NCBI RefSeq assembly: GCF_000142905.1
Contig: NW_013657657.1
Location: forward strand, 248,001 to 312,000
Direction: 5' to 3'
From: Thecamonas trahens ATCC 50062
Lineage: Eukaryota > Protista > Apusomonadida
DNA length: 64,000 bases
Shown in pieces: positions 6,459 to 39,660 of this stretch. The position numbers and the translations under genes were made by a program. Numbering within the stretch: the first letter of the stretch is position 1; every line of letters starts with the position of its first letter. The notes under the pieces were generated by a model, which made no database searches, was not told where the DNA came from, and saw only the letters and a program-made list of their open reading frames with translations.

Positions 6459-6490
<32 letters not shown>

Positions 6491-6529: not shown

Positions 6530-6537
6530 CTCCTCCC

Positions 6538-12357: not shown

Positions 12358-12374
12358 AGATCATCAAAGTCCAA

Positions 12375-15300: not shown

Positions 15301-15678
15301 GGTGATGGCAATTGGGGCGGGATGGCGAGTGGTAGCCGTTGTTGCTGACGTGGCCGAGCTTGCAGCGGCGGGATGTGGCGAGGTAGACGAGGGAGCCGCA
15401 GCAGACGACATCTTGGTTGTCGATGAGCGCGCAGACGGCGAGGAGGAAGAGCGAGCAGGAGCAGGAGCAGGAGTAGGAGCAGGAGCAGGAGCAGGACGAC
15501 GAGGAGGAGGAGGAGGAGGAGGAGGCTCAAAGCCAGACCGAAGGATTGTCAGAAGATATACATTTTGAACAATGACCATGAGTGTGAGGCAGGCAAGCAT
15601 AGTCCGCCATGTCACGCATCGGCCGACCACCCGTTCACCAAGACTATGTCCGCGCCGATCCACACCACCAATAAGCAT
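12375..15678 (-). CDS. Type II membrane fusion glycosyltransferase: TM + Pro/Thr stem + GT61 (beta-1,2-xylosyltransferase-like) + GT7 (B4GALT7-like) + ILEI/GG domain; two -1 frameshifts in this assembly
   Basis: Three consecutive ORF segments join at ~15292 and ~14330. GT61 motifs: RYEYCNLFHTMTDWY, WLDGH, RKDYVAHPR, GIHGAGLSH. GT7 motifs: LVPFRD, FNKG, HDVD, GFSNGYWGWGREDDD. ILEI-like motifs: GLHLAALD...FDT...G.RSSY. Confidence 0.8.
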
Positions 15679-17237: not shown

Positions 17238-18011
17238 AAAATCCTCGCAAACCCATGCGCAAACCCATGTGCAAACCCTTGCGAATAGCCCTTCCCCCCT
17301 CCCCCCAAGTTCCTCCCTTCTTCTTCCCCTCTCACTACGATCTCCACCATCACCGCTTTGTGGGGCATTCTGGGCCCCATCAGTACTCCGGGTCTCCAAC
17401 GTCCAACTTGGATTCTTGGAATCACGTCAACTCGACGTCAACAGTCATGGTTGGAATACTTTGGTCTCTGATACCTCTCCCCCACTGTCCAACGACCGCA
17501 GTACGGATCCCAGCTAGCCACCATGACTCCCTCTCCGCTCTTTGCTTCACACAAGTTGTGAATGTGAACAGAGCAGGGCACACACATTCTATACCACCTC
17601 CCCTCCCCTCCCCAACCACTTGCCACTCCTTCTTCCCACCACTGTCTCCGCTGTGCCTTTCCCGCAGTGGCAGCCTGCTGGCCAACCATGGCCTGAAAAA
17701 ATTCGGCTGGCCAGCCTTCGGCCGACCCCTCCCCTGGTCCCCCCTTTCTCCACCTCCGGCAATGCCAAGCCTCCGCTCGCGAGCGCCCCCTCCCTACCAG
17801 ACTCCTGCCCTTGCTTTCCCACTGTTGTGCATTGTATTGTGCGTGTTCTTCGCCCAGTCGCGCCACCCCCTCCCCGCCTACAAGCACCAGCTGTCCTTCC
17901 GCTCGCTCGCCCCCCCCCCCCTCTCCCCGCCACTTGCCAACACCCGCAATCACTCATCCAGCGCCCGCCCTCCCCCTCCCCCTCCCCCCCCCTCCCCTGG
18001 CTCGTACTTTG

Positions 18012-21000: not shown

Positions 21001-21326
21001 TCCGCGCCGCCCAGACCGGCTTCTTCATCTCGATCGTCATCGTCCAGTGGGCTGACGTCCTCGCTTGCAAGACCCGCATGCTCTCGCTCTTCCAGCAGGG
21101 CATGAAGAACATGGTCATGAACGCCGGTCTCGTCGAGGAGACCATCCTCTGCATCATCCTCGCCTACGTGCCGTTCATCAACCTTGTCTTTGGCTCGCGC
21201 CCTGTCAAGCTTATCCACTGGCTCGCCCCGGTCCCGTTCTCGCTTGCCATCCTCGTCTATGACGAGCTCCGCAAGGCTGTCATCCGCCGCTCCAACGGTT
21301 TTATCAAGCGCACCACCTACTACTAA
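18012..21326 (+). CDS. ATP1A: Na+/K+-transporting P-type ATPase alpha subunit (P2C)
   Basis: DNASLTGES, VANVPEGLL, CSDKTGTLTQN, KGAPE, MVTGDHP, TGDGVNDSPALK, SNIPEI, DLGTD and C-terminal TTYY. The exact start is uncertain because an ACAG acceptor lies at 18030. Confidence 0.95.
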   Translation: MSLFDTVSDDSYYSGYYSDEEVGRPAPAAAAPPKYSSRGDRGSKGSSGRNAGGSSRRASGRKSSTRTPVQTDIVRTMSEISAKYEQASAKAARGLNLTRSEMRACNELRMDQHLMSLDELMNDPVYKTDPERGLSKSVAAERLKANGPNELTPEDKVPEWKKFVEQMTGWFSLLLWAGSALSFFGYILDSEGVENLYIGIVLAVVVFLTGVFSYMQERKSSKIMEKFKDFLPKTTRVIRDGTEMSVPVENLVLGDVVKVKYGDTIPADLRMIEVAGLKVDNASLTGESEPQARDTNVSEENPLEATNLAFFLTAAVEGTATGVVINCGDDTIMGRIAKLVATTEQRKTPIQKEIDRFILIISTVAMVLGISFFLVGVANGTPWISNLVFMIGIIVANVPEGLLATVTVSLSLTAQRMARKKVLVKLLDAVETLGATTTICSDKTGTLTQNVMTVAHLFYNGNLEDCDFAGTTQDKTWEWDAPEFQELRRVAMLCNNAAFDEDEEAMKIANKLDRPVSGDASETAILKFTESICRGGDTVKDYRKRNTKGHPPHVREIIFNSKNKWQLSIHELEDDPDQLLLCIKGAPERIMRMCSHVYRDGRERTFTEAEKARVLAGQNTCAENGERILGFAEYYLPKSDFPVDYDFDMTYPYNFPGPPSVDELADDSLDLGRYTFVGFMAMMDPPREAVPGAVAKCKSAGIKVIMVTGDHPTTAKAIAKMVNIITSPTAEDIAKERGTEVTPAIRAEARSIVKAGWELPEFTEEDWHFVLDHEQIVFARTSPQQKLFIVSHCQERHEIVAVTGDGVNDSPALKQADIGIAMGIMGSDVAKAAADMILLDDNFASIVNGIEEGRITFDNLKKSIAYTLSSNIPEITPFLSFITFGMPLPLSTVLILCVDLGTDMLPAISFAYEMAESDIMDRKPRARDDNLVTSRLISFSYLQVGIFQALAGFFMYLVILGDKGFRPSILPGTGIDWSRDKNLMIAGENYVVRDEALRAAQTGFFISIVIVQWADVLACKTRMLSLFQQGMKNMVMNAGLVEETILCIILAYVPFINLVFGSRPVKLIHWLAPVPFSLAILVYDELRKAVIRRSNGFIKRTTYY

Positions 21327-24569: not shown

Positions 24570-25260
24570 ATCAACCGCACACACAAAAGCAAACTTTACC
24601 ACACAGAAGACAATGTCCTGAAACACAGCCAAGTTCTTGTTCTTCCCTCGCCTGACTCGTGTAGAGAATGTGAGAGAGGTTGACCGTGCAAGAGAGCAAG
24701 AGAGTGCAAGAGAGATAGCCGGCGCGTGGACGCCTGCCCCGAGCTGGATGTGATGGATGGCCAACGAGGCCGGATCACTCGCACCGGCCATTGCCACCTG
24801 CGAGTTGCGGGGGAGGGGCGCTGAGGAGTACCGCTTCCAAGTCGCAAAAAATAGTCACTCCAGTCCACCCAAACCACGTGACATTTTTGTTGGTTGGGTC
24901 GGTCGTCTTCCAGTTCTTCGTCTCCTCCGCCTTTTGCCGCAAACGTCCAATATTTGTAGCCGCTGACCCCCGAGGCAACCTTCCCCCCCTACACCGGCAT
25001 TCACTCGTCTTCTCACACCGAAACAGGGCTATACGTGTGTATACGCGTTTAAAGCTTTGTTTTGCTTGTTCCAAGTACGTGCCTCCTCCTCTGTGCCTCT
25101 TTCCTGCCCGCTCCACCACCCACCCACGTGGTCGGTTGCTGTTTTGGCGTAGCCGACCCCTTTTTTTGACCCTTTTCCCCTCTCCATCTCTCACCACCAG
25201 CCGCCCGGCCTCCTTCTCCCTGCCACCCTCATGGTGCCCCACATGTTCAGAATGCGAACA

Positions 25261-28200
25261 ATGTACCAAAGTACGGTGTTTGCAGCTGTTGCCTGTCTGC
25301 TGCTTGCAGCCTCAGCCTCGGCAGCCATTATCACCAAGACGGCCACTTCGTCCACTTTCTACGGTTCGCACAACGGCGCACCCTGGTCGGGAAACCGCGC
25401 CCAGGGTGCCCACTGCTGCGGCGCCAGCCAGCATTCGCAGTATCGTATCTTCTACGGCTTCAACCTCAACATCCCGAGTGGTCATGCCGTTGACGGCATC
25501 CAGGTCTCGTACGAGTACATCTCTTCGACCACTGGTTTCTCGGCCTGCGTTAACAAGGACATCACGCTCCGAACCACGTCCGGCTCGGTCATTCTCTCCA
25601 GCAATGCCAAGACCGGATCTAGTTACTTTTCCAGTGGCACCATCTCCAAAGGTTCTTCAACCGACACATGGGGCCTCTCTGGTTCGGCGTCTTCGATCCG
25701 CTCTGCTCTCAATTCGGGTACGTTTGGTGTCGCCGTCCGTGCCACCGGATTCGCCGAGGCATCAAGCTCGTCTGGCCAGATTCCGCTCGCGCCTACCGGG
25801 GGCGATAGTGATGGATCTCGCCGCGTTTCCACCCGTGCGCCCACTGTAGGAACCTGGCGCGTCGACGTCTACAACGGTGACGTGACTATCAAGGTCTGGA
25901 CCCATCAGCTCACCTGCGGCGCGACCGGGCCGTGGCCGACAACCAACGCCGGTTCGACCGCCACTCTTGGCTGCTCAAGCGGTTACACCGGCTCGCGGAC
26001 CCGGTACTGCACGACATCAGGATCGTGGCAGTCCGAGTCCAACGGGTGCACGCTTGTCACCAACTACTGCTCACTCCTTACTGCGCCGTCCAACGGCATC
26101 CTCACCGCCTCATGCTCCAGCAAGCGCTCGCTTGGCGAGGTCTGTGGCACTTTTCAGTGTAACTCTGGGTACCAACTGTCCGGGTCGGCGTCGCGGACTT
26201 GCAACGCCGGACCGTCGTGGTCTGGCTCGGCCGCATCGTGCGTCAAGATCACCAACTACTGCTCACTCCTCACGGCCCCATCCAACGGCTACATCACATC
26301 GGGCTCGTGCTCTGCGCAGCGCTCTATCGGCGAGTCATGTGGAACGTTCCAGTGCAACGGTGGCTACAGCCGCTCTGGCGATGCGTCGCGGACGTGCAAC
26401 GCGGGACCGTCGTGGTCCGGCTCGACAGCGTCGTGCGGACTCATCACCAACTACTGCCCGCTCCTGACCGCACCGGCCAACGGAATCATCACGACCTCGT
26501 GCACCTCCAAGCGCTCGGTCGGGGAGTCGTGCGGCAACTTCCAATGCAACGGCGGGTACCAGCTGAGCGGATCGATGTCGCGGACGTGCCAGTCGAACGC
26601 GGCGTGGGGCGGGTCAGCCGCGTCGTGCTCTCCCATTCCTGACTATTGTCCGCCACCGCCGGCTGCTCCGTCCAACGGCGTCCAGGGCTCATGCTCGCGG
26701 ACGGTTGGTGGCACTTGCTCGTACTCTTGCAACACCGGGTACAATCCCGGCGGCGGCATGACCATCACCTGCCAGTCCAACGGTGCGTGGTCCGGATCGC
26801 CTGCTGCCTGCAACCCGACAGCCGACTACTGTCCCGCGCTCACGGCACCGACGAACGGTAATGCTCCGGCCTCGTATTCGCGGACGATCACCTCTGTCGC
26901 CTCCCCGTACACCTGCAATGCAGGCTACGATCTCTCCGGCTCGGCGTCGCGGACGTGCCAATCTGACGGGACGTGGTCGTCGACAACGCCGACGTGCGTT
27001 CTCGACACGTCATACTGTGGGGCTCGCCCCGCGACCCCGGCCAACGGCAACGCTGGCTCGTGTGGATACTCGATCGGCGCGTCGTGCACCTACGGGTGCA
27101 ACAATGGGTATGAGCCGACAGGCTCGATGACCGTCACCTGCAACTCGGGCGGTGCGTGGTCCGGGAGCCCGGCGTCGTGTGGGCTCAAGACCAACTACTG
27201 CCCGGCACTGACCAACCCAACCAACGGCCAGGATCCTTCGTCGTACTCGCGGGTGCTCGGCGCGGTGGCGTCGCCGTACACGTGCAACTCGGGCTACATC
27301 GTGACTGCGGGCTCGACGTCGCGGACGTGCATGGCCAACTCTGCTGCATCGGGGGTGTGGTCCGGCACGACGCCGACGTGCTCGATCGACAACGCGCACT
27401 GCAGTACGGCGCCGGCGCCGCCGCCCAACTTTTTCATCGACACTTGCTCGGCTGCCCAGTTTGGCGAGTGCATCTACAAGTGCAACAACGGCTACACCCG
27501 CAGCGGCGGAGACCGGTACACGTGCCAGCCGGACACATCCTGGGGCGGTAGCCTCGGGACGTGCTCTCTTACCAACAACTACTGTCCGGCGCTGACGATC
27601 CCGGCCAACAGCAACCGCGGCGCGTGCTCCGGCCAGCTCGGCTCGATCTGTGGCCCGGTCACCTGCAATGCAGGGTACTCGATCTCTGGCTCGGCGTCGC
27701 GGACATGCGAAGACGCTGGGGTGAGTGCGGGAATCTGGAGTGGCACGGCGACAAGCTGTGCGCTCATCACCAACTACTGTACGCTTCCGAGTACGCCGAG
27801 CAACGGCGTGCTGGGAGCGTGCACGCGCTCCATCGGCGGGAGCTGCACGTACACGTGTGGCAACGGGTACGAGACGTCCGGCACGACGACGATCACCTGC
27901 CAGTCGGGACCGACCTGGTCGGGCTCGTTTGGCACGTGCGTCAAGACGAGCGGGTACTGTCCGGTCGAGTCGGCGCCGGCCAACGGCGTGGCGGGGACCG
28001 GGTGCACGGGCCAGATCGGGACGTTGTGCGGACCGGCGAGCTGCAATGCCGGGTACAACCCTTCGGGGACGGCGACGCGGACGTGCAACGCCAACAACGC
28101 GGTGAGTGGGACGTGGAGCGGGACGACGCTGACGTGCGCGATCGACCCGGCTTACTGCACGACGCCTGCGGCGCCGGCCAATGGGGCGATTGGATCGTGC

Positions 28201-31200
28201 CCGCTCTCGATTGGGTCGTCGTGCACCGCGTCGTGCTCGAACGGATACTCGACAGGCGGGCTGACGTCGGTGACTTGCGAGGCCGGTCCGGCGTGGTCGG
28301 GCGTGTTCGGTGCCTGCTCGAAGTATGCTGGGTACTGTGGCGCGCTGCCGCAGCCGTCGAATGGAGTGATTCCAGGCTGCACAGGCATGCTGGGAAGCTC
28401 CTGCGGGGCTGCGAGCTGCAACGCCGGCTACAATCTGGCGGGCGACGCGACGCGTAACTGCATCGACAACGGACCTGGGTTTGGCAGTTGGACCGGCACC
28501 TCGGTCTCGTGCAACATCGAACCGAACCATTGCACGCCGCCGCCGGCACCGGCCAACGGTGCGCTCGGAACGTGCATCACGTCGATCGGCGGCAGCTGCA
28601 GTTACACGTGCGACAACGGATACGAGGTGTCTGGAACCGGAACGATCACGTGCTCGGCCGGACCTACGTGGTCGACGTCGTTCGGGACGTGCGTCAAGAG
28701 CGCCAACTACTGCCCGGCGCACCCGCCGCTGGCCGACGGCAGCAACCCGTCGTGCACCGGCGAGATTGATGAGGTCTGCGGGACGTTCACCTGCAATTCC
28801 GGCTTTGACATTGTTGGCTCGGCAGAACGGACGTGCTTGAACAATGGCCCCATCACGGGGATTTGGTCCGGCACCGCGCCATCGTGCCAAGTCGACAACG
28901 ACTACTGTCCTAGCGGCCCGGCACCGCCCGCCAACGGAGTCAAGGGCTCGTGCGCACGGTACCTTGGTGGAACGTGCGAGTACTCTTGCAACGCAGGATA
29001 CACCAATACCGGCTCGTCCTCGCTGACCTGCACGTCTGGCAAGACCTGGTTGGGCGCTTCCCCCAACTGCGTGCCGTACAATGACTACTGTCCGCCGAAA
29101 ACTTCCATCGAGTATGGTAACGCGCCGGTGTGCAACAACCGCATCAACGAGGTGTGTGGCACCTTCACTTGCAATCCGCCTTTCGCCATTTTTGGCGAGA
29201 AGGATCGGACATGCGGGCCTGACGGCGACTGGATTGGCGACGAGCCGTTTTGCTCGTCGACCGACGTTTCCAAGTCGCTTGTCTACTCGGCGCAGTTCAT
29301 CACGGTCTCGGCCGACGGTCCAGGCTGGCGGATTGAGATCGAGCCGCGGACTGCATCGAACGACACTCTTGCCGAATCGCAGGACTTTCCGTCGGTCCTC
29401 CTGGCGTCGACGCCACCATCGGTCGAGGCGCCGTCGGTGGCACCAGCAGCGGTGTGGAGCGCCGCAAAGTCGCGCTTCCTTATCGAGCTTACCCCGCAAG
29501 TGGTTGCTACCTACTCGCTCAACATCCTGCTCAACGGCGTTGTCATCGGTGCCTCGCCGTACACTCTGGTTGTCGAGGCCGGCGTTCCTGCAGCGCCGAC
29601 GACCTTTGCTACTGGCCGCGGGCTCGGCATTGTTGTGACCGACGACGATTTGTTCCCGCAGAACGAAGTTGTCCGGTTTGCGGTCTTCCCGCACGACCAG
29701 CACGGTAACGTGGTGCCAATGGCGAGCAACCCGGCGACAACGCCGTACGTGGCGACGCTCAAGGGCGCCGGCTTTGCCGAGGGTGACGTCCCGATTGTGT
29801 ATCTGGCGGGCGAGTCGGGACCGACGACGGGCTACGTGTACGAGTACTCGGTGCCGATCGGCGGGCTGCTGACACTGTCTGTGACGCTTGACGGGCTGGC
29901 CATTGCCGACTCGCCGTGGCTGGTCCAGGTGCGTGCAATTTGCGAGCCTGGCAAGCAGGCGCTTCAGATCACGGGCCCATGCGTTCCGTGCGAGAAAGAC
30001 TCGTACTCTGCGCCCGACGGGCGCGAGTGCTTGTTGTGCCCGGACTTTATGACGTCGCCGTCGTCGTCAGGATCGATCGGCAACTGCACGTGTGTGCGTG
30101 GATACTTTGAGAACCTGGCTGTGGTGGGCGCTGATCCGAGCAAGCGGCAGTGCGACGCGTGTCCTGTGGGCGCATCGTGCGCAGGCGGCAACGCGCGGCC
30201 GATTGCGGATCCCGGGTACCACCAGGTGGGTGACGAGTTTGTGTCGTGCCCACAGCCGTCGGCGTGCCTTGGTGCTGGACAGTGCGCACGGGGCTACAAG
30301 GGCGCGTCGTGCACTGACTGCGTCTCGGGCTACTACCGGCTTGGGGACCGCTGCTACAAGTGCAACAAGGCACAGGCGGCTTTCATCGCGACTGGCATTG
30401 CGTTTTTGCTGCTGCTGTTTGTGGCGGCGCTGGTGTACCTCAACACGCGCGAGTCGCACAACCGGATGTACACGGCAGCGGCGTTTATGATCGGTTTCAA
30501 CTCGCTGCAGATCTCGGCGATGTATGGAGAGATCGATCTGCGTTGGCACCCTGTGGCGGAGCAGTTCTTCAACATCCTCTCACTGGCCAACCTCAACATC
30601 GAGCTCACCTCGCCCGAGTGCTCTGTCGACTTTTTCGGTGATCCGTGGTTGATCAAGTGGGTGCTCATGCTCATGCTGCCGATCTTCATGGTCTTCCTTC
30701 TTGGCGTTACTTTTGTGCTTGGCCTCCTCTACCGGCTGTTTGCACGGACGTACGGTGCCAAGTGGGCGGACAGGCACCCGTCGTACTTCCCTGGCGCCGA
30801 AAACTTCTTTGACGCCGGCGGCAAGGCGTCGCGGTCAACGCTGATCAAGTTCCGGATTGGGCGTCTGATGTCCGAGGCACCGTTGACGCCTGCGGCGCTG
30901 CGGCAAGCTGTTGTGCGGACGTTCTTCCAGCTGTTCATCTTCTGCTATCTGCCGTTGACCGCAGTGGTCCTGCGGTACTTTGAGTGCGAGCGCCGCGCGC
31001 CGGGCTCGTCCGAGTACGTCCTCGCCACCGCGCCGTCAGTCGAATGCTACGACGCCACGTACTGGAGTCTGTTCTGGATGGCCATTGCCGGCTCGATCGT
31101 TTACGCGCTCGGTATCCCGCTCTTCACCTACCTCCTCCTCTACTTCCGCAAGCGGCAGATGGCCGAGGTCAACTTCATGCTCCGCTACGGATTCCTCGTG

Positions 31201-32226
31201 GCGCGCTTCCGCGAGAAGCTGTACTACTTTGAGATCACAATTATGATCCGCAAGTTGCTTGTTGTCGGTGCGGTCGTCGCCTTTGGCTCGCCAGTTCAGG
31301 AGGCTGTTATGGCAGCGCTCGTTCTTGTTATTTCGTTCGGCTTTGTCGCCCACGCCACGCCGTATCTCAAACCGTTCCACAACCGCCTCGCGATGTCTGC
31401 TCTCTTCACTTCGTGCATTGTGCTCATCGGCGGAACCGTCGACTCGAACGGTCTCCGCGACACGCTGGTTCTCGGCGGCCTCGGCGCCAACATCTTTGTT
31501 ATCGTCTACGGTATTGTGGTGGAGACCAAGAACCTCATCATCCGCGAGGCCGAGGACATGGTTGAGGTCCTCGAGCTGCAGGACACTTTCGAGATGGGCA
31601 CGTTCACCATCAACGAGGACGAGGACACTTCCATGCATTACATGGTCCCGACGGATGACGGCAATGGCAAGCCGCCAGCCGGCGGCATGGCCAAGCCGGC
31701 CGACTCAATCGTCGTCTCGTCAAGCACCGATGACAACACCTCGATGGTCACCGCCTCAATGGTCTCGTCGTCGGCACTCCACCCGTCGGAGTCGATCTTC
31801 CCCTCGTTCGCTCTCGAGTGTGACACGGCTCCACCAGTCATCCTCCCGCCGGGCCCGCCGTCGCCGGTCTCGCCGGTCGCACCGGCGATGCCGGCGATGC
31901 CGCCGCCACCGGCCCCGGCCCCGCCACCACCGCCCCCCGCCCCTGCCGCGGCTCTCCCGCCACCGACACCGTCGATGGTCGCTGGCGTCCCGCCCGGAGG
32001 CTCGCTTCCGCCGCCGCCGTCTTCCACTAACCAGCCGGTGGTGGGCCCTGGTGGTCTGGTGGCGCCGCTGCCACCGCCCAAGGCCGCCCTGCCGCCACCG
32101 CCCGTCGGCCATGGCCCGCCCAAGCCTTCCCGACCCAAGCCCTCGGCCCATGCCGGCCCGCCCATCCCGGCGCCTAAGCCGTCTGGCACCTCGGCCGCAC
32201 CTTTTCCCCCGCCGAAGCCGTACTAG
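25261..32226 (+). CDS. Giant cell-surface receptor-like protein, copy 1: signal peptide, N-terminal beta domain, HormR-like domain, 17 Sushi/CCP repeats, 2 filamin/Ig-like domains, Cys-rich (GCC2_GCC3-like) repeats, ~9-TM TRP-like domain, Pro-rich tail
   Basis: Single uninterrupted ORF. CGATGPWPTTNAG...C..G..G...R.C...G.W, then repeated YC..P.NG...C..GY...G...RTC...WSG...C, then YGFLVARFREKLYYFE...RKL...PY...FHN. Confidence 0.88.
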   Translation: MYQSTVFAAVACLLLAASASAAIITKTATSSTFYGSHNGAPWSGNRAQGAHCCGASQHSQYRIFYGFNLNIPSGHAVDGIQVSYEYISSTTGFSACVNKDITLRTTSGSVILSSNAKTGSSYFSSGTISKGSSTDTWGLSGSASSIRSALNSGTFGVAVRATGFAEASSSSGQIPLAPTGGDSDGSRRVSTRAPTVGTWRVDVYNGDVTIKVWTHQLTCGATGPWPTTNAGSTATLGCSSGYTGSRTRYCTTSGSWQSESNGCTLVTNYCSLLTAPSNGILTASCSSKRSLGEVCGTFQCNSGYQLSGSASRTCNAGPSWSGSAASCVKITNYCSLLTAPSNGYITSGSCSAQRSIGESCGTFQCNGGYSRSGDASRTCNAGPSWSGSTASCGLITNYCPLLTAPANGIITTSCTSKRSVGESCGNFQCNGGYQLSGSMSRTCQSNAAWGGSAASCSPIPDYCPPPPAAPSNGVQGSCSRTVGGTCSYSCNTGYNPGGGMTITCQSNGAWSGSPAACNPTADYCPALTAPTNGNAPASYSRTITSVASPYTCNAGYDLSGSASRTCQSDGTWSSTTPTCVLDTSYCGARPATPANGNAGSCGYSIGASCTYGCNNGYEPTGSMTVTCNSGGAWSGSPASCGLKTNYCPALTNPTNGQDPSSYSRVLGAVASPYTCNSGYIVTAGSTSRTCMANSAASGVWSGTTPTCSIDNAHCSTAPAPPPNFFIDTCSAAQFGECIYKCNNGYTRSGGDRYTCQPDTSWGGSLGTCSLTNNYCPALTIPANSNRGACSGQLGSICGPVTCNAGYSISGSASRTCEDAGVSAGIWSGTATSCALITNYCTLPSTPSNGVLGACTRSIGGSCTYTCGNGYETSGTTTITCQSGPTWSGSFGTCVKTSGYCPVESAPANGVAGTGCTGQIGTLCGPASCNAGYNPSGTATRTCNANNAVSGTWSGTTLTCAIDPAYCTTPAAPANGAIGSCPLSIGSSCTASCSNGYSTGGLTSVTCEAGPAWSGVFGACSKYAGYCGALPQPSNGVIPGCTGMLGSSCGAASCNAGYNLAGDATRNCIDNGPGFGSWTGTSVSCNIEPNHCTPPPAPANGALGTCITSIGGSCSYTCDNGYEVSGTGTITCSAGPTWSTSFGTCVKSANYCPAHPPLADGSNPSCTGEIDEVCGTFTCNSGFDIVGSAERTCLNNGPITGIWSGTAPSCQVDNDYCPSGPAPPANGVKGSCARYLGGTCEYSCNAGYTNTGSSSLTCTSGKTWLGASPNCVPYNDYCPPKTSIEYGNAPVCNNRINEVCGTFTCNPPFAIFGEKDRTCGPDGDWIGDEPFCSSTDVSKSLVYSAQFITVSADGPGWRIEIEPRTASNDTLAESQDFPSVLLASTPPSVEAPSVAPAAVWSAAKSRFLIELTPQVVATYSLNILLNGVVIGASPYTLVVEAGVPAAPTTFATGRGLGIVVTDDDLFPQNEVVRFAVFPHDQHGNVVPMASNPATTPYVATLKGAGFAEGDVPIVYLAGESGPTTGYVYEYSVPIGGLLTLSVTLDGLAIADSPWLVQVRAICEPGKQALQITGPCVPCEKDSYSAPDGRECLLCPDFMTSPSSSGSIGNCTCVRGYFENLAVVGADPSKRQCDACPVGASCAGGNARPIADPGYHQVGDEFVSCPQPSACLGAGQCARGYKGASCTDCVSGYYRLGDRCYKCNKAQAAFIATGIAFLLLLFVAALVYLNTRESHNRMYTAAAFMIGFNSLQISAMYGEIDLRWHPVAEQFFNILSLANLNIELTSPECSVDFFGDPWLIKWVLMLMLPIFMVFLLGVTFVLGLLYRLFARTYGAKWADRHPSYFPGAENFFDAGGKASRSTLIKFRIGRLMSEAPLTPAALRQAVVRTFFQLFIFCYLPLTAVVLRYFECERRAPGSSEYVLATAPSVECYDATYWSLFWMAIAGSIVYALGIPLFTYLLLYFRKRQMAEVNFMLRYGFLVARFREKLYYFEITIMIRKLLVVGAVVAFGSPVQEAVMAALVLVISFGFVAHATPYLKPFHNRLAMSALFTSCIVLIGGTVDSNGLRDTLVLGGLGANIFVIVYGIVVETKNLIIREAEDMVEVLELQDTFEMGTFTINEDEDTSMHYMVPTDDGNGKPPAGGMAKPADSIVVSSSTDDNTSMVTASMVSSSALHPSESIFPSFALECDTAPPVILPPGPPSPVSPVAPAMPAMPPPPAPAPPPPPPAPAAALPPPTPSMVAGVPPGGSLPPPPSSTNQPVVGPGGLVAPLPPPKAALPPPPVGHGPPKPSRPKPSAHAGPPIPAPKPSGTSAAPFPPPKPY

Positions 32227-32743
32227 TCGTTTTGGCCCTCTTCACTCTCTACAACCATCATAACATTTTCCCCCTCTTCACCCTCATCAGCTGTCTTGTC
32301 GGCCTTCTCATCTCAAGTACAAAAAAAATAGCCAACTTGCGCCACCTGGCACCCAGGAATAGAGTGACACCAACCAACCAACTAACCATTAGTGTGTGAG
32401 CCGTGTCGACAGAGAGAGCTACATCAAGAGCTGGAGACGACAACTCCAGCACGGCCGTCCCTCACAGCTGCAGCCCCGCAGTTGTTCAACAGTCATTCCT
32501 CTCTCCCTCTCACTTTGTGGCAAAGAAACGGAAGGACAACCCCCGTCCTCTCCCCTTCACCCCCCACCCCCACCCATACACTCTTCCAATCTACAACTTC
32601 ACGCTCACCAGCCCAAGCGTACACCCCTCCTCCCCCTGCGTGCCACTTTGTGTTCCACGAAAACGATCGCTTCCTCTGCGGTTGGCGCAAAAAATTCCTC
32701 TCTCTTTGCTGCTTTTTGCACACCTCGATTCCCACGTCGGCAC

Positions 32744-35700
32744 ATGACCTGTCACACTCTGCACGGCCTTCTCCGGCTTGTGCTGGTAGTGGCCAGCATT
32801 TTGGCCATGGTCCATGCGGCTCCATCTACGTCGTCGTCGTCGTCCGTCACTTACGGTATTGGAACTGCCTCCTGGAGCGGAAACTCGGTCGGTGACGTAG
32901 ACTGCTGCGGCGACTCGCGGACGTCCAACTACCGCATCTTCACTGGCTTTGGCATCAACGTCCCTCTCGGCCATGCTGTCGACGGCATCTCAGTCTCGGC
33001 TCTTTGCACGCGGTCCATCAACGGCTTCTCGTCGGCCTGGTTCAAGGACTTTTCACTCCGCACCACCTCTGGCACCATCGTCCAGGGTGCCGGTGTCAAG
33101 ACGCTCAACTCGCTGCTAGGCTCGACTAGTACAAAGACAGCCGGCTCGTCGACTGACACCTGGGGCATGACAGGCTCTCCATCGCAGATTCGCTCGGCAC
33201 TCAACTCGGCCTCGTTTGGTGTGGCTGTCCGAGTCTATGGCTATGCCGAGTCGTCGTCGTCAGGGCCGTCGGGCCCCGGCAGCTCAGGCCCTATTCATAT
33301 TGAGTTTGCCCCTGATCATTCGTCTGAAGCCAGGCTAGATTCAGACGCCTATGGTGATGTCGGCGCGGCGCCGGAGCGCAAGGTTGCCACCCGCTCTTTT
33401 GGATCGTGGACTGTCAACATTGCAGAAACCGCCGTCTCCATCTCCATCTGGACTCGCCAGCTCACCTGCGCCGCGACCGGGCCGTGGCAGACGACCAACG
33501 CCGGCTCAACTCACAACGTCGGCTGCTCTGCCGGTTACACTGGTACCTATTCGCGGTACTGCAACACCAATGGCGAGTGGAACACGCCTACGGATACCTG
33601 CACCAAAATCACCAACTACTGCACTCTCCTTACTGCGCCGTCCAACGGCATCCTCACCGCCTCATGCTCCAGCCAGCGCTCGATCAACGAGGTCTGTGGC
33701 ACTTTTCAGTGTAACTCCGGATACCAACTGTCCGGGTCGGCGTCGCGGACTTGCAACGCCGGACCGTCGTGGTCCGGCTCGGCCGCATCGTGCGTCAAGA
33801 TCACCAACTACTGCTCACTCCTCACGGCCCCATCCAACGGCTACATCACTTCGGGCTCGTGCTCTGCGCAGCGCTCCATCGGCGAGTCATGTGGGACGTT
33901 CCAGTGCAACGGTGGCTACAGCCGCTCTGGCGATGCGTCGCGGACGTGCAACGTGGGACCGTCGTGGTCCGGCTCGGCAGCGTCGTGCGGACTCATCACC
34001 AACTACTGCCCGCTCCTGACCGCACCGGCCAACGGCATCATCACGACCTCGTGCACCTCCAAGCGCTCGGTCGGCGAGTCGTGTGGCAACTTCCAATGCA
34101 ACAGCGGGTACCAGCTGAGCGGATCGATGTCGCGGGCGTGCCAGTCGAACGCGGCGTGGGGCGGGTCGGCCGCGTCGTGCTCTCCCATTCCTGACTATTG
34201 TCCGTCACCGCCGGCTGCTCCGTCCAACGGCGTCCAGGGCTCATGCTCGCGAACGGTTGGTGGCACTTGCTCGTACTCTTGCAACACCGGGTACAATCCC
34301 GGCGGCGGCATGACCATCACCTGCCAGTCCAACGGCGCGTGGTCCGGATCGCCTGCTGCCTGCAACCCGACAGCCGACTACTGTCCCGCGCTCACGGCAC
34401 CGACGAACGGTAATGCTCCGGCCTCGTATTCGCGGACGATCACCTCTGTCGCCTCCCCGTACACCTGCAATGCAGGCTACGATCTCTCCGGCTCGGCGTC
34501 GCGGACGTGCCAATCTGACGGGACGTGGTCATCGACAACGCCGACGTGCGTTCTCGACACGTCTTACTGTGGGGCTCGCCCCGCGACCCCGGCCAACGGC
34601 AACGCCGGCTCGTGTGGATACTCGATCGGCGCGTCTTGCACCTACGGGTGCAACAATGGGTATGAGCCGTCAGGCTCGATGACCGTCACCTGCAACTCGG
34701 GCGGTGCGTGGTCCGGGAGCCCTTCGTCGTGCACGTCCAAGACCAACTACTGCCCGGCACTGACCAACCCGACCAACGGCCAGGATCCTTCGTCGTACTC
34801 GCGGGCGCTCGGCCAGGTGGCGTCGCCGTACACGTGCAACTCGGGCTACATCGTGACTGCGGGCTCGACGTCGCGGACGTGCATGGCCAACTCTGCTGCA
34901 TCGGGGGTGTGGTCCGGCACGACGCCGACGTGCTCGATCGACAACGCGCACTGTAGTACGGCACCGGCGCCGCCGGCCAACTTTTTCATCGACACTTGCT
35001 CGGCTGCCCAGTTTGGCGAGTGCATCTACAAGTGCAACAACGGCTACACCAACAGCGGCGGAGACCGGTACACGTGCCAGCCAGACAGATCCTGGGCCGG
35101 TAGCCTCGGGATGTGCTCTCTCACCAACAACTACTGTCCGGCGCTGACGATCCCGGCCAACGGCAACCGCGGCGCGTGCTCCGGCCAGCTCGGCTCGATC
35201 TGTGGTCCGGTCACCTGCAATGCAGGGTACTCGATCTCTGGCTCGGCGTCGCGGACATGCGAGGACGCTGGGGTGAGTGCGGGAACCTGGAGTGGCACGG
35301 CGACAAGCTGTGCGCTCATCACCAACTACTGTACGCTTCCGAGTACGCCGAGCAACGGTGTGCTGGGAGCGTGCACGCGCTCCATCGGCGGGAGCTGCAC
35401 GTACACGTGTGGCAACGGGTACGAGACGTCCGGCACGACGACGATCACCTGCCAGTCGGGACCGACCTGGTCGGGCTCGTTTGGCACGTGCGTCAAGACG
35501 AGCGGGTACTGTCCGGTCGAGTCGGCGCCGGCCAACGGCGTGGCGGGGACCGGGTGCACGGGCCAGATCGGGACGTCGTGCGGGCCGGCGAGCTGCAATG
35601 CCGGGTACAACCCTTCGGGGACGGCGACGCGGACATGCAACGCCAACAACGCGGTGAGTGGGACGTGGAGCGGGACGACGCTGACGTGCGCGATCGACCC

Positions 35701-38700
35701 GGCTTACTGCACGACGCCTGCGGCGCCGGCCAATGGGGCGATTGGATCGTGCCCGCTCTCGATTGGGTCGTCGTGCACCGCGTCGTGCTCGAACGGATAC
35801 TCGACAGGCGGGCTGACGTCGGTGACTTGCGAGGCCGGTCCGGCGTGGTCGGGCGTGTTTAGCGATTGTGCGACGTATGCTGGGTACTGTGGCGCGCTGC
35901 CGCAGCCGTCGAATGGAGTGATTCCAGGCTGCACAGGCATGCTGGGAAGCTCCTGCGGGCCTGCGAGCTGCAACGCCGGCTACAATCTGGCAGGCGACGC
36001 GACGCGCAGCTGCATCGACAACGGACCTGGGCAGGGATGTGGTCAGGCACGGCTGTCTCGTGCAGCATCGAACCGAATTATTGCACGCCGCCGCCGGCAC
36101 CGGCCAACGGTGCGCTCGGAACGTGCATCACGTCGATCGGCGGCAGCTGCAGTTACACGTGCGACAACGGATACGAGGTGTCTGGAACCGGAACGATCAC
36201 GTGCTCGGCCGGACCTACGTGGTCGACGTCGTTCGGGACGTGCGTCAAGAGCGCCAACTACTGCCCGGCACACCCGCCGCTGGCCGACGGCAGCAACCCG
36301 TCGTGCACCGGCGAGATTGATGAGGTCTGCGGGACGTTCACCTGCAATCCCGGCTACGCGCTGTCCGGATCGGCCGAGCGAACTTGCCAGGTCAGCGGTC
36401 CGGCCGTAGGCGTGTGGTCGGGGACCGCGCCGTCGTGCGTGGTTGATGGTGACTACTGCCCGGTTGGCCCAAGTGCGCCCGGGAATGGGACGCAGAATGC
36501 TTGCCCGAGGTTCTTGGGCGCACAGTGCGAGTACTCGTGCAATGCGGGGTACACCAACACCGGATCATCGGCGCTTTCCTGCGCTGTTGGCCCAATGTGG
36601 ACCGGGACGCCGGCCAGCTGTGTTCCATTTGACAACTACTGCGCGGTGAGGTCGTCGCCGGCCGACGGATTTGCGCCTGTGCCGGCGTGCAAGAACCGCA
36701 TCAACGAGTGGTGTGGCCCGTTCACGTGCGCGCCGGCGTTCACGCTGTTTGGCTCTGAGTATCTGTTGTGTGGGTCGGACGGAAACTGGATCGGTGTTGA
36801 CCCGTTCTGCTCGTCGACAGACCCAGCGCTCTCGCTGGTGTACTCGGAGAAGCATGTCACGGTTTCGGCCGACGGCCCGGGCTGGCGGATCGAGATCGAG
36901 CCGCGGACGTCGTTGAACGACACGGTGTCGAACTCGCAGGACGTGGTGGCTGTTCTCTTTACGTCGACAGCGGTGTCGATCAGCGCGCCATCAGTGGCAC
37001 CGGCCGCAGTGTGGAACGAGGCACTCAGCCGGTTCTTTATTGAGCTTACGCCCAAGGTGAAGGCCTCGTACTCTCTTAACATTGTGCTCAACGGCGTTGT
37101 TATTGGCGACTCGCCGTACACTCTGGTTGTCGAGGCTGGCGTTCCTGCAGCGCCAACGACGGTGGCGACTGGCCGCGGGCTCGGCATTGTTGTGACCGAC
37201 GACGATTTGTTCTCGCAGAACGAAGTTGTCCGGTTTGCGGTCTTCCCGCACGACCAGCACGGTAACGTGGTGCCGATGGCGAGCAACCCGGCGACAACGC
37301 CGTACGTGGCGACGCTCAAGGGCGCCGGCTTTACCGAGGGTGACGTTCCGATTGTGTATCTGGCGGGCGAGTCGGGACCGACGACGGGCTACGTGTACGA
37401 GTACTCGGTGCCGATCGGCGGGCTGCTGACACTCTCTGTGACGCTTGACGGGCTGGCCATTGCCGACTCGCCGTGGCTGGTCCAGGTGCGTGCAATTTGC
37501 GAGCCTGGCAAGCAGGCGCTTCAGATCACGGGCCCATGCGTTCCGTGCGAGAAAGACTCGTACTCTGCGCCCGACGGGCGCGAGTGCTTGTTGTGCCCGG
37601 ACTTTATGACGTCGCCGTCGTCGTCAGGATCGATCGGCAACTGCACGTGTGTGCGTGGATACTTTGAGAACCTGGCTGTGGTGGGCGCTGATCCGAGCAA
37701 GCGGCAGTGCGACGCGTGTCCTGTAGGCGCATCGTGCGCAGGCGGCAACGCGCGGCCGATTGCGGATCCCGGGTACCACCAGGTGGGTGACGAGTTTGTG
37801 TCGTGCCCACAGCCGTCGGCGTGTGTGGGTGCCGGGCGGTGCGCGTTGGGATACAAGGGGCCGTCGTGCACTGACTGCACCTCGGGCTACTACCGGCTGG
37901 GGACCAAGTGTTACAAGTGCAACAAGGCGCAGGCGGCGCTTGTTGCGGCTGGCATTGCGTTTTTGCTGCTGCTGTTTGTGGCGGCGCTGGTGTACCTCAA
38001 CACGCGCGAGTCGCACAACCGGATGTACACGGCAGCGGCGTTTATGATCGGTTTCAACTCGCTGCAGATCTCGGCGATGTATGGAGAGATTGAGCTGCGT
38101 TGGCACCCTGTGGCGGAGCAGTTCTTCAACATCCTTTCGATTGCCAACCTCAACATCGAGCTCACCTCGCCCGAGTGCTCGTTCAGCGTGGGTGACCCGT
38201 GGTTGGTCAAGTGGGTGATGATGCTGCTGCTGCCGATTTTTATGGTGCTGATGCTTGCTGTTGTGTTTGGGCTCGGGCTGGCGTACAGGCTGTTCACCAA
38301 GACGATTGGCGCCAAGTGGTCCGAGAAGCACCCGTCGTACTTCCCTGGCGGCGACGGGTTCTACGACGCCGGTGGTAAGCTGCCGCGGTCGCTGGCGACC
38401 AAGTTCCGGATCGGGCGGCTGTTGTCTGAGAGTCTGCTGACGCCTGCGGCGCTGCGGCAAGCTGTGATGCGGACGTTCTTCCAGCTATTCATTTTCTGCT
38501 ACCTGCCTCTGACTGCGTCTGTCCTGCGGTTCTTCGAGTGCAAGCGCCGTGCACCGGGCTCATCCGAGTATGTCTTGGCGTCTGCGCCGTCTGTTGCTTG
38601 CTTTGACTCGCGGTACTGGAGCCTGTTCTGGTTGGCGCTTGCCGGCGGTGCAGTGTACGCGCTGGGGATCCCGATGTTCACGTTCGGCCTGCTGTACAAG

Positions 38701-39660
38701 CGCAAGCAGAGCCTGGACGAGCTCAACTTTATTCTCCGCTACGGATTCCTCGTGGCACGCTTCCGCGAGAAGCTGTACTACTTTGAGATCACGATCATGG
38801 TCCGCAAGCTCCTTGTGGTTGCAGCGGTGGTGACGTTTGGCACGCCGGTGCAGGAGGCGATCATGGCGGCGCTTGTGCTTGTTGTCTCGCTCTGCGTTGT
38901 CTCGCACTGGATGCCATACCTCAAGCCGTTCCACAACCGGCTTTCGATGGGGGCTCTGCTGACGTCGTGCGTTGTCCTGTTTGGCGGGACTGTCGACTCG
39001 AACCGGCTCCGCGACACGCTGGTCCTCGGCGGACTTGCGGCCAACGTGCTGGTCATTGTCTATGGCGTACTCGTGGAGTCGCGCAATCTCATGGTGCGTG
39101 AGGCGGAGGACATCATGGAAGTACTGGAGATGCAGGACGACTTTGAGATGTCGACGTTGGCGATCCATGAGGACGAGGACCAGAGCGTGCGTTACATGGC
39201 ATGTGGCGATGGCGGGTATGGTGGGTCGTCGCAAGGTGGCATGAGCTCGTCGTCGATGATGACGACGTCTGTTGTCGGGTCGTCGGTGCTCCATCCGTCC
39301 GAGTCGATCTTTGTGTCGCAAGCCGGCGTGCAGGATGACGACGACTTTGCAGTGCCACAGATTGGCAGTGGACGTGATGCGCCGGCGGCACCGGGAGTGG
39401 GAGCTGTGGGACCGGGCGGGCGTGTGATGGCACCGGCGCTTCCGCCGCGCGAAGTGACTGCGCCGGCGGCTGCTGGCCCGCCCAATCCGTCTGCCGGCCC
39501 GCCGAAGCCCACGCCGTCGCCGATGATCAACCCTGGACCGCCGCTGCCGCCTTCAGCGATGGCATCACCGGCTGCTGCTCCGATGCCCGGCCCTCCTTTG
39601 CCGCCGCCGCCAGCTCCAGCGCCCAAGCCGGCGGCCAAGCCTGCCGCACCCCAAGCCTGA
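32744..39660 (+). CDS. Giant cell-surface receptor-like protein, copy 2 (tandem paralog); -1 frameshift at ~36035 in this assembly
   Basis: ORFs 32396..36409 and 35866..39660 join at CAGGGATG (~36032-36039). Adding one G gives QGMWSGT, matching FGSWTGT in copy 1. Domain order is the same as copy 1. Confidence 0.85.

What the first reader, a model, noticed from the sequence alone, without database searches (positions are those of the whole stretch)
25261..39660. Tandem pair of ~2300-aa adhesion-receptor/channel-like proteins (HormR + 17 Sushi + filamin-Ig + Cys-rich + TRP-like ~9TM + poly-Pro tail)
Seen: two head-to-tail intronless paralogs with the same domain order and mostly 6-Cys, selectin-like Sushi repeats. 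Known: HormR domains are typical of secretin/adhesion GPCRs, and the YGFL...YYFE...RKL...PY...N membrane core resembles the TRP-like/FLC class widespread in protists. Inference: a long ligand-binding stalk coupled to a putative channel or signalling domain, with LPPPP/FPPP tails able to recruit EVH1/SH3/profilin actin regulators. This would be a candidate surface-sensing, gliding or prey-capture receptor system in a unicellular eukaryote. No GAIN/GPS motif is evident.
Basis: partly seen in the sequence, partly recalled or inferred. Interest (0 to 1): 0.8.

Follow-up and report, generated by a model that had tools for sequence, protein, structure and literature searches.

The report
Sushi-stalked Pkd2/Flc-type membrane receptor pair
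Two neighbouring genes of the gliding protist Thecamonas trahens encode giant surface proteins that join a long stalk of 17 Sushi repeats to a nine-helix membrane module related to the fungal Pkd2/Flc putative calcium channels; they belong to a family of at least 90 such genes in this genome, and their function is untested.

Summary
Gene 1 (25231-32226) is one uninterrupted 2331-codon ORF. Gene 2 (32744-39660) has the same domain order but is broken by a missing base near 36031. The public model hides this break with an invented 98-nt intron.

The domain order, checked here, is:
- signal peptide
- an HRM-like 4-Cys unit (below the Pfam cut-off)
- 17 Sushi repeats (15 with six Cys)
- filamin-type Ig (borderline)
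- a Cys-rich ephrin-receptor-like/DUF7630 region
- a 9-helix membrane module
- a Pro-rich tail

The membrane module scores below the Pfam PF06011 ("TRP"/Flc/Pkd2) cut-off. It is nevertheless clearly homologous to Thecamonas proteins that pass it (hhalign 99.9%, E 3e-34). Its confident AlphaFold model matches no solved fold, so it is neither a canonical 6-TM TRP channel nor a 7-TM GPCR.

The module occurs at 90 or more loci in this genome, with varied ectodomains. First-stage notes of this scan already flagged it on other pieces of the same genome. Other protists carry it too.

Channel activity, ligand and actin coupling remain inferences. Alveolate CRMP contact sensors share the layout, but their homology was not tested. 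Verdict: a new variant of a known kind, of moderate interest.

The parts
25231..32226 (+). Gene 1 (public model P0001 starts at 25252): complete 2331-codon ORF, no intron
25231..25323 (+). Gene 1 signal peptide (aa 1-31)
   Evidence: Hydrophobic segment at aa 16-34; read from the sequence
25324..25905 (+). Gene 1 N-terminal head domain (aa 32-225), a jelly-roll beta sandwich found in only 5 genes of the genome
   Evidence: No Pfam hit. Five loci. AF2 pLDDT 79.5. Foldseek top hits are Eph-receptor ectodomains, E 6e-4 but TM about 0.2. VIA gives Z 8.5 to CBM15, adhesin, MAM and Eph LBD domains.
25906..26058 (+). Gene 1 HRM-like 4-Cys unit (aa 226-276)
   Evidence: HRM 16.7-21.9 bits against a cut-off of 26.2. 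All 5 head-bearing paralogs hit HRM, best E 3e-5. A Sushi hit at 17.6 bits overlaps it.
26059..29265 (+). Gene 1, 17 Sushi/CCP repeats (aa 277-1345): 15 six-Cys and 2 four-Cys
   Evidence: Pfam Sushi E 2e-72; Cys spacing; 195-bp tandem period at 26057-26628
29266..29925 (+). Gene 1 filamin-type Ig region (aa 1346-1565)
   Evidence: Filamin 26.1 bits against a cut-off of 26.9, two stretches. The same position in relatives P0003 and P0004 scores 60 bits.
29926..30366 (+). Gene 1 juxtamembrane Cys-rich region (aa 1566-1712): ephrin-receptor-like/TNFR-like plus DUF7630
   Evidence: DUF7630 31 bits against a cut-off of 27; weak Ephrin_rec_like and TNFR_ELAPOR1 hits
30367..31545 (+). Gene 1 nine-helix membrane module (aa 1713-2105), PF06011 (Flc/Pkd2 'TRP-like') superfamily
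31546..32226 (+). Gene 1 cytoplasmic Pro-rich tail (aa 2106-2331, 28% Pro; LPPPP twice, FPPP once, one run of six Pro)
   Evidence: no Pfam hit
32744..36030 (+). Gene 2 (AMSG_05459), first frame: signal peptide, head (32807-33457), HRM-like unit (33458-33610), Sushi 1-13
36026..36036 (+). Gene 2 frame break: one base fewer than gene 1 beside a short G run. The reading frames on both sides continue the Sushi repeat.
36031..39660 (+). Gene 2, second frame: rest of Sushi 13 to 17, Ig (36823-37482), Cys-rich (37483-37923), 9-TM module (37924-39099), Pro-rich tail (39100-39657)

Best explanation
These are two paralogous surface receptors of Thecamonas trahens. Each has a large extracellular arm: a jelly-roll head, an HRM-like unit, a stalk of 17 Sushi repeats, two filamin-type Ig domains and a Cys-rich juxtamembrane unit. 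If the stalk is extended it would be roughly 60-70 nm long; that figure comes from general knowledge of CCP modules. The arm is fixed to a nine-helix membrane module with its N-terminus outside and its C-terminus inside. A disordered Pro-rich cytoplasmic tail follows. The membrane module is homologous to the PF06011 family (yeast Flc1-3, S. pombe Pkd2). The most likely working model has three steps. The head and stalk bind a surface, prey or matrix ligand. Engagement or pulling is passed through the rigid Cys-rich unit to the membrane module, which answers with cation (Ca2+) entry or a conformational signal, as proposed for stretch-activated Pkd2. The tail then couples the site to actin regulators. 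What is shown here: the domain composition, the topology, the homology to PF06011, the expansion to 90 or more loci with swapped ectodomains, and the gene-conversion mosaic with purifying selection on both copies. What is inferred: surface location, ligand, ion flux, gating and tail partners.
For: Architecture. Organism and public models. Homology to PF06011 rests on several results. Eight of 22 paralogous modules hit only this family. Fourteen Thecamonas loci pass its cut-off, and several of them also match this module at 1e-15 to 1e-27. L034 scores 35 bits on PF06011 and matches the module at E 3e-30. The profile-profile comparison gives 99.9%, E 3e-34 over 350 columns. P0047 matches at E 5e-6. 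The nearest language-model clusters carry PF06011, DUF7630 and Ephrin_rec_like. The confident 9-TM model has pLDDT 85.5 and pTM 0.81. Its layout matches the published AlphaFold description of S. pombe Pkd2: signal peptide, ectodomain, 405-aa nine-helix TMD and disordered tail (bioRxiv 10.1101/2022.08.11.503631). Reconstituted Pkd2 lets Ca2+ through when the membrane is stretched (PMC9727806). The head has a binding-module fold. dN/dS is 0.24-0.35 in all blocks of the pair, including those downstream of the frameshift. WH1/EVH1 genes exist in the genome.
Against: The window genes themselves score below the PF06011 cut-off (17.7 vs 28.5 bits). No solved structure shares the fold, so a pore cannot be argued from structure. 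Channel function of PF06011 proteins rests on few experiments, and the yeast members were first described as flavin carriers (my own knowledge). There are no expression, localisation or binding data. The tail argument rests on short motifs, and the tail is only 50% conserved between the two copies. Gene 2 may be broken.
Confidence: 0.5

Rival explanations
1. A CRMP-type contact sensor rather than a channel. As with alveolate CRMPA/CRMPB, two paralogous nine-helix cores would pair in the membrane and, on contact with a target, trigger regulated exocytosis or another downstream signal without conducting ions themselves.
For: CRMPs have the same layout: adhesive domains, EGF/ephrin-receptor-like Cys-rich units, a conserved 9-TM core and a cytosolic C-terminus. 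They act as heterodimers needed for rhoptry or mucocyst discharge (PMC9670195, PMC9815656). The window genes form a tandem paralog pair. A chromerid protein with DUF7630 plus PF06011 is a detectable relative.
Against: Sequence or fold homology between this module and CRMP cores was not tested, because no CRMP sequence was reached by the three word searches. The dimer prediction for the two modules gave no verdict. Thecamonas has 90 or more such genes, not a dedicated pair.
Confidence: 0.2
2. A passive adhesin or cell-coat protein. The Sushi stalk and head would make up part of the glycocalyx or theca, or stick the gliding cell to surfaces, and the multipass module would be only a stable anchor or trafficking unit.
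For: The ectodomain is built entirely of adhesion-type modules. Sushi repeats are abundant in this genome. The stalk is homogenised by gene conversion, as in many surface-coat genes.
Against: The module has many invariant polar residues on both membrane faces across paralogs that are only 30-40% identical overall. It has stayed attached to very different ectodomains in distant eukaryotes. That argues for a function beyond anchoring, for which a single helix would do.
Confidence: 0.15
3. A small-molecule transporter module (flavin-carrier type, as first proposed for yeast Flc proteins) carrying a large luminal or extracellular domain.
For: PF06011 includes the yeast Flc proteins (PMC9600462 abstract; the flavin-carrier history is from my own knowledge). 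Foldseek's weak top rows are mostly transporters.
Against: Those Foldseek rows are noise (E at least 0.05, TM below 0.2). A 1700-aa adhesive ectodomain and a Pro-rich tail make no obvious sense for a carrier.
Confidence: 0.05
4. A canonical TRP/polycystin channel or an adhesion/secretin-type GPCR, as the Pfam name 'TRP' and the HormR label might suggest.
For: The sub-threshold HRM hit and the Pfam name of PF06011.
Against: The module has nine helices, not six or seven. No TRP, PKD2 or GPCR chain stands out in Foldseek or VIA-align searches of the PDB, although hundreds of such chains are present. There is no GPS/GAIN hit.
Confidence: 0.03

Closest known systems
Fungal PF06011 proteins: S. pombe Pkd2, Trp663 and Trp1322; S. 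cerevisiae Flc1-3; A. nidulans TrpR; C. neoformans Flc1
   Same: The ~400-aa nine-helix membrane module is homologous, with the N-terminus outside and the C-terminus inside. It follows a signal peptide and an ectodomain and is followed by a disordered cytoplasmic tail (bioRxiv 10.1101/2022.08.11.503631). Pkd2 is at the plasma membrane and passes Ca2+ on stretch (PMC9727806).
   Different: Fungal members carry one small Ig/ML-like lipid-binding ectodomain of about 150 aa. Here it is replaced by about 1700 aa of jelly-roll head, HRM-like unit, 17 Sushi repeats, Ig domains and Cys-rich modules. The window genes score below the Pfam cut-off. The family has 90 or more copies here, against 3-4 in yeasts.
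Alveolate cysteine repeat modular proteins (CRMPA/B of Toxoplasma, CRMP1-4 of Plasmodium, Tetrahymena CRMPs)
   Same: Same layout: signal peptide, host- or ligand-binding modules, EGF/ephrin-receptor-like Cys-rich units next to a conserved 9-TM core, and a cytosolic C-terminus. They are proposed contact sensors and occur as paralog pairs (PMC9670195, PMC9815656).
   Different: Homology was not tested here. CRMP ectodomains use Kringle, MAR and lectin modules rather than Sushi repeats. CRMPs act in rhoptry or mucocyst exocytosis, organelles that Thecamonas is not known to have (my own knowledge).
Adhesion GPCRs and polycystin-1
   Same: Same logic: a long modular adhesive ectodomain, with an HRM-like unit, joined to a multipass signalling domain. 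Another Thecamonas PF06011 protein even carries a GPS motif.
   Different: There is no 7-TM or 11-TM/TRPP fold. The window genes have no GAIN/GPS. The HRM hit is below its cut-off.
Selectins and complement-control proteins (CR1, factor H)
   Same: Long tandem arrays of CCP/Sushi modules form a stalk with a binding domain at the tip. The extra Cys pair sits at the positions seen in selectin CCPs (sequence pattern; the comparison with selectins is from my own knowledge).
   Different: Those are single-pass or secreted animal proteins. Here the stalk ends in a nine-helix module, and the head is a jelly roll rather than a C-type lectin.
Other protist proteins with the DUF7630/ephrin-receptor-like plus PF06011-type core
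   Same: The same Cys-rich plus 9-TM core is found in Vitrella (ANF-receptor and LRR), Phytophthora sojae (cadherin and IPT/TIG), Cafeteria (IPT/TIG), volvocine algae (SRCR and beta-helix), and Thecamonas paralogs with FG-GAP/VCBS. Two environmental proteins, P0003 and P0004, even share the order Sushi, filamin, DUF7630, TM.
   Different: All are annotated only as hypothetical or uncharacterised. Apart from P0003 and P0004, their ectodomains differ, and those two have fewer Sushi units and, as far as Pfam shows, lack the head.

Membership tests
Pfam PF06011 (TRP-like / Flc / Pkd2) | Score at or above the curated gathering cut-off (28.5 bits) | tested here: not met
   17.7 bits for gene 1 and 17.6 bits for gene 2. 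Only profile positions 272-350 match. The genome-level score at this place is 19.4 bits.
Pfam PF06011 (TRP-like / Flc / Pkd2) | Significant homology of the whole membrane module to proteins that do pass the cut-off | tested here: met
   hhalign of A1 against A4 (five Thecamonas PF06011-positive proteins) gives 99.9%, E 3e-34, over 350 columns. L034 (35 bits on PF06011) matches the module at E 3e-30. P0047 matches at E 5e-6 with 87% coverage. Eight of 22 paralogs hit PF06011, and no other family recurs.
Pfam PF06011 (TRP-like / Flc / Pkd2) | Nine transmembrane helices in about 400 aa, N-terminus out and C-terminus in, followed by a disordered cytoplasmic tail (as modelled for S. pombe Pkd2) | tested here: met
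   The AF2 model has pLDDT 85.5 and nine TM helices. The hydropathy profile agrees. K/R-rich loops sit on the inferred cytoplasmic side (sequence). The Pkd2 description comes from bioRxiv 10.1101/2022.08.11.503631. The two models were not superposed.
Pfam PF06011 (TRP-like / Flc / Pkd2) | Small N-terminal Ig/ML-like lipid-binding ectodomain of the fungal members | tested here: not met
   The ectodomain is the head, the HRM-like unit, 17 Sushi repeats, Ig domains and Cys-rich modules.
Pfam PF06011 (TRP-like / Flc / Pkd2) | Stretch-activated Ca2+ permeation | not testable with these tools
   Known only for reconstituted S. pombe Pkd2 (PMC9727806).
Canonical TRP / polycystin-2 channels | Six-helix S1-S6 fold with a pore loop, similar to solved TRP structures | tested here: not met
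   Foldseek against the PDB gives a best E of 0.05 with TM-scores of 0.2 or less, and no TRP/PKD chain is listed. VIA-align over 48,161 chains gives a best Z of 7.9, generic helical bundles. The profile search of PDB sequences finds nothing at E up to 1.
Adhesion / secretin GPCRs | Seven-helix GPCR fold | tested here: not met
   The module has nine helices. GPCR and rhodopsin rows appear only at noise level, Z 6.0-6.5.
Adhesion / secretin GPCRs | GAIN/GPS autoproteolysis motif | tested here: not met
   No GPS hit at E up to 0.1 in either gene. The method does detect GPS in another Thecamonas PF06011 gene.
Adhesion / secretin GPCRs | HRM (hormone receptor) domain | tested here: inconclusive
   16.7-21.9 bits against a cut-off of 26.2. 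All five head-bearing paralogs hit HRM, best E 3e-5. The unit also matches Sushi at 17.6 bits.
Sushi / CCP repeat (PF00084) | Repeats of about 60 aa with the four consensus Cys and the conserved Trp, above the cut-off | tested here: met
   E 2e-72 with 13 stretches detected. Cys spacing gives 17 units.
Filamin/ABP280 Ig repeat (PF00630) | Score at or above 26.9 bits | tested here: inconclusive
   19.8 bits in the full protein and 26.1 bits for the excised region. The relatives P0003 and P0004 score 60 bits at the same position.
DUF7630 (PF24633) | Score at or above 27 bits, placed directly before the first TM helix | tested here: met
   31 bits in gene 1 and 27.3 bits in gene 2.
Alveolate CRMPs | Adhesive modules, then EGF/ephrin-receptor-like Cys-rich units, then a conserved 9-TM core | tested here: met
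   The layout was compared with the descriptions in PMC9670195 and PMC9815656.
Alveolate CRMPs | Sequence or structural homology of the 9-TM core | not tested
   No CRMP sequence was returned by the searches, and none could be entered by reference.

The most novel reading that the evidence does not exclude
The Cys-rich plus nine-helix core of these genes, the alveolate CRMP core and the fungal Pkd2/Flc module would form one ancient eukaryotic superfamily of contact and force sensors. In apusomonads it would be the dominant surface-receptor class, with 90 or more genes carrying shuffled ectodomains. The tandem Sushi pair would work as a hetero-oligomeric, contact-gated Ca2+ entry site that steers gliding or bacterial prey capture through its Pro-rich tails.
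Probability: 0.15. Interest if true: 0.85.

Novelty: new variant of a known kind. Interest (0 to 1): 0.55.

Why it matters
Apusomonads sit close to the root of the animal-fungal lineage and are used to reconstruct how adhesion and signalling evolved before multicellularity. This work shows that Thecamonas joins animal-type adhesion modules (Sushi, filamin Ig, FG-GAP, HRM-like, GPS) to the Pkd2/Flc-type nine-helix module rather than to 7-TM or kinase domains. It does so in 90 or more genes. That points to a large and essentially unstudied receptor class in protists. It also gives the poorly understood fungal Pkd2/Flc family, and possibly the apicomplexan CRMP invasion sensors, a broader evolutionary context. 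The module has no solved structure, so a structure or a flux assay for any member would inform all of them.

Tried and rejected
- Canonical TRP channel and GPCR readings are rejected by the fold searches and by the helix count.
- The profile search of PDB sequences found nothing.
- The 'atlas' structure library was not available.
- hhalign of A1 against the single best PF06011 protein (L031) gave only 58% probability, E 1e-4, over the central motif. The comparison became decisive only with an alignment of five PF06011-positive proteins.
- CRMP sequences were sought with three word searches: gene 1 residues 1560-2160, Vitrella P0023 residues 900-1450, and gene 1 residues 1740-2110. Two language-model look-ups were also tried. 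None returned a named CRMP, so that link stays open.
- Complex prediction of the two membrane modules gave no verdict (score 0.03). This is not evidence either way.
- Literature searches found no description of this architecture. The terms were Thecamonas with Sushi, PF06011, DUF7630/PF24633, Thecamonas with TRP, and apusomonad adhesion receptors.
- Gene 2 was never read through its frame break. Its two pieces were searched separately.
- An old pseudogene reading of gene 2 is disfavoured, because dN/dS is 0.24-0.33 downstream of the break.
- Neighbouring genes are unrelated housekeeping genes and give no functional context.
Full report
**What is there**

The window comes from Thecamonas trahens ATCC 50062, an apusomonad. 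The public proteins P0001 (identical to gene 1 from its third Met) and AMSG_05459 (gene 2) lie on a 456-kb contig of that organism. The window is contig 23, positions 248001-312000, of a 28.7-Mb assembly.

Gene 1 is one open frame of 2331 codons, 25231-32226.

Gene 2 starts at 32744 and ends at 39660 but changes frame near 36031. Aligned to gene 1, it lacks one base beside a short run of G, inside an otherwise regular Sushi repeat. The public model steps over this break with a 98-nt 'intron' (36056-36153), which removes about 33 residues of the repeat. I take that intron for an annotation device.

Downstream of the break, gene 2 still shows purifying selection against gene 1: dN/dS is 0.33 in the Ig region and 0.24 in the membrane module. 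The break is therefore either an assembly error or very recent. I searched the two pieces separately and did not join them.

**Domain order, checked piece by piece**

- **Signal peptide:** aa 1-31.
- **Head:** aa 32-225. It has no Pfam match and occurs in only five genes of the genome. A five-sequence AlphaFold model has pLDDT 79.5, with a disordered insert at model residues 147-174 (aa 178-205 of the protein). It is a jelly-roll beta sandwich.
  - The best Foldseek rows are Eph-receptor ectodomains (E 6e-4, but TM only about 0.2).
  - VIA-align gives Z 8.5 or less to CBM15, bacterial adhesin domains, MAM and Eph ligand-binding domains.
  - This identifies a generic binding-module fold, not a family assignment.
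- **HRM-like unit:** aa 226-276, with four Cys. It stays below the HRM cut-off (16.7-21.9 vs 26.2 bits), although all five head-bearing paralogs hit HRM (best E 3e-5). It also matches Sushi weakly.
- **Sushi repeats:** aa 277-1345. There are seventeen units, 15 with six Cys and 2 with four, with Pfam E 2e-72.
- **Filamin-type Ig region:** borderline at 26.1 vs 26.9 bits. It passes clearly (60 bits) at the same position in two environmental relatives.
- **Cys-rich region:** it ends in DUF7630, which passes its cut-off (31 vs 27 bits).
- **Membrane module:** nine helices, then the tail.
- **Tail:** 226 aa with 28% Pro, two LPPPP motifs, one FPPP and one run of six Pro. The gene 2 tail has 19% Pro and one LPPPP.
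- **GPS motif:** none found in either gene.

**The membrane module**

A search of the genome with gene 1 aa 1700-2150 gave 147 matches. I merged them by hand into at least 90 separate loci. Only 94 of 239 candidates were scored, so this is a lower bound.

An alignment of 22 paralogous modules (A1) shows invariant polar and aromatic residues.

PF06011 is the only Pfam family that recurs among these 22 modules (8 of 22, best E 3e-5). The window genes themselves score 17.7 bits, below the 28.5-bit cut-off. Homology to PF06011 is still well supported:

- Fourteen Thecamonas loci pass the PF06011 cut-off.
- One of them, L034, scores 35 bits and also carries Ephrin_rec_like and DUF7630. It matches the module at E 3e-30.
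- An alignment of five such proteins matches A1 at hhalign probability 99.9%, E 3e-34, across 350 columns.
- A PF06011-bearing metagenomic protein matches gene 1 at E 5e-6 over 87% of the region.

The AlphaFold model of the module is confident (pLDDT 85.5, pTM 0.81). It shows nine membrane helices, a short extracellular beta hairpin carrying conserved Cys, and K/R-rich loops on the inferred cytoplasmic side.

The model matches nothing solved. Foldseek gives a best E of 0.05 with TM 0.2 or less. VIA-align against 48,161 chains gives a best Z of 7.9, which is background for helical bundles. A profile search of PDB sequences is empty.

The module is therefore a member of the PF06011 superfamily. 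It is not a canonical six-helix TRP channel and not a seven-helix GPCR.

The published AlphaFold description of S. pombe Pkd2 has the same plan: signal peptide, ectodomain, 405-aa nine-helix domain and disordered tail (bioRxiv 10.1101/2022.08.11.503631). Reconstituted Pkd2 lets Ca2+ through when the membrane is stretched (PMC9727806).

**Family context**

In Thecamonas the same Cys-rich plus nine-helix core sits behind several ectodomains: Sushi arrays, FG-GAP/VCBS propellers, beta-helices and ephrin-receptor-like repeats. A canonical PF06011 gene on contig 43 has a GPS motif just before the membrane domain.

Outside Thecamonas the core follows other ectodomains:

- an ANF-receptor plus LRR ectodomain in Vitrella
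- cadherin plus IPT/TIG in Phytophthora sojae
- IPT/TIG in Cafeteria
- SRCR and beta-helix in volvocine algae

Two environmental proteins share the order Sushi, filamin, DUF7630, TM. All named relatives are annotated as hypothetical.

First-stage notes of this scan describe the same module on other pieces of this genome. I found no paper that describes the architecture.

**The two copies**

Identity between the two copies is a mosaic. Synonymous divergence varies about 25-fold between blocks, while dN/dS stays near 0.25-0.35.

| Block | aa identity | dS |
|---|---|---|
| Head | 51% | 1.64 |
| HRM-like | 61% | 0.90 |
| Sushi 1-13 | 96% | 0.066 |
| Sushi 14-15 | 90% | 0.29 |
| Sushi 16-17 | 58% | 1.79 |
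| Ig | 85% | 0.33 |
| Cys-rich | 95% | 0.11 |
| Membrane module | 78% | 0.585 |
| Tail | 50% | 1.42 |

This is the pattern of gene conversion homogenising the stalk and the Cys-rich unit, while the head and tail stay distinct. It fits two receptors with different ligand and coupling specificity.

**How it probably works**

Shown here: a secreted-type N-terminus, an extracellular arm made entirely of binding and spacer modules, a conserved nine-helix module of the Pkd2/Flc kind, and a disordered Pro-rich cytoplasmic tail.

Inferred: the head binds a ligand on a surface or on prey. Force or a conformational change passes through the disulfide-rich juxtamembrane unit to the module. The module then admits Ca2+ or signals in some other way. 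The tail recruits actin regulators; WH1/EVH1 genes do exist in the genome.

I give this model about 0.5 overall. The identity of the parts is near certain. The ion-flux step taken alone is about one in three.

The main rival (0.2) is a CRMP-like, non-conducting contact sensor. Alveolate CRMPs have the same layout, act as heterodimers through their nine-helix cores, and trigger exocytosis (PMC9670195, PMC9815656). I could not obtain a CRMP sequence by reference, so homology is untested. The dimer prediction for the two modules gave no verdict. A passive adhesin or coat role (0.15) and a carrier role (0.05) remain possible.

**Surroundings**

The neighbouring genes are unrelated eukaryotic genes:

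- a P-type cation ATPase
- a G-patch protein
- SAS-6
- a TPH-domain protein
- an FAD/Fe-S dehydrogenase
- a glycosyltransferase fusion
- an XPD-type helicase

They give no functional context.

**Verdict**

Four corrections apply. Gene 2 is frame-broken. A head domain precedes the HRM-like unit. The HRM and filamin labels are sub-threshold. 'TRP-like' means the PF06011 fold, which is unrelated in structure to true TRP channels.

The function is unproven. I rate the finding as a new variant of a known kind: a PF06011 module with a giant adhesion-type ectodomain, within a very large lineage expansion. It is of moderate interest.

Noticed in passing
window 36056-36153: The public gene model AMSG_05459 (P0002) removes 98 nt as an intron. 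The only apparent reason is to restore the frame after a one-base shortfall near 36031, and the cut drops about 33 residues of a Sushi repeat.
   Followed up: yes
L043:3022-7299 (G000:C43:255521-259798): A 1426-aa Thecamonas ORF combines a GPS motif (30 bits, aa 944-971) with a canonical PF06011 membrane domain (78 bits, aa 1089-1357). This is an adhesion-GPCR/polycystin-1-style cleavage motif placed on a Pkd2/Flc-type module.
   Followed up: partly
G000, at least 90 loci listed: The nine-helix module is massively expanded in the 28.7-Mb genome. Most copies lie in open frames of 1000-2700 aa, and one lies in a 6353-aa frame. Sushi repeats occur at 20 or more loci, many beside such modules.
   Followed up: partly
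window 25324-39657 (blocks): Synonymous divergence between the two genes ranges from 0.066 (Sushi 1-13) to about 1.7 (head, Sushi 16-17). This is a gene-conversion mosaic.
   Followed up: yes
P0005 (AMSG_12417; G000:C62, about 5200-15430, minus strand): This third paralog, with head, Sushi repeats and a 59%-identical membrane module, is annotated as a 3429-aa 'pyruvate kinase' fusion. The public model probably merges two genes.
   Followed up: no
window 12375-14528 (-): One ORF combines GT61, galactosyltransferase GT7 (N and C) and ILEI domains.
   Followed up: no
window 17811-21326 (+): A P-type cation ATPase with N- and C-terminal cation-ATPase domains. An overlapping 1209-aa antisense ORF has no Pfam hit and is probably a GC-rich artefact.
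   Followed up: no
P0023, P0024 (Vitrella brassicaformis): A class-C-GPCR-type ANF-receptor (Venus flytrap) domain plus LRRs is joined to DUF7630 and a PF06011-type module instead of a 7-TM domain.
   Followed up: partly
L035 (G000:C47:31198-34635): The genome-level search scored PF06011 at 34.7 bits here. hmmscan of the 771-aa ORF covering the same frame returned no family at E 0.001 or better. The discrepancy is unexplained.
   Followed up: no
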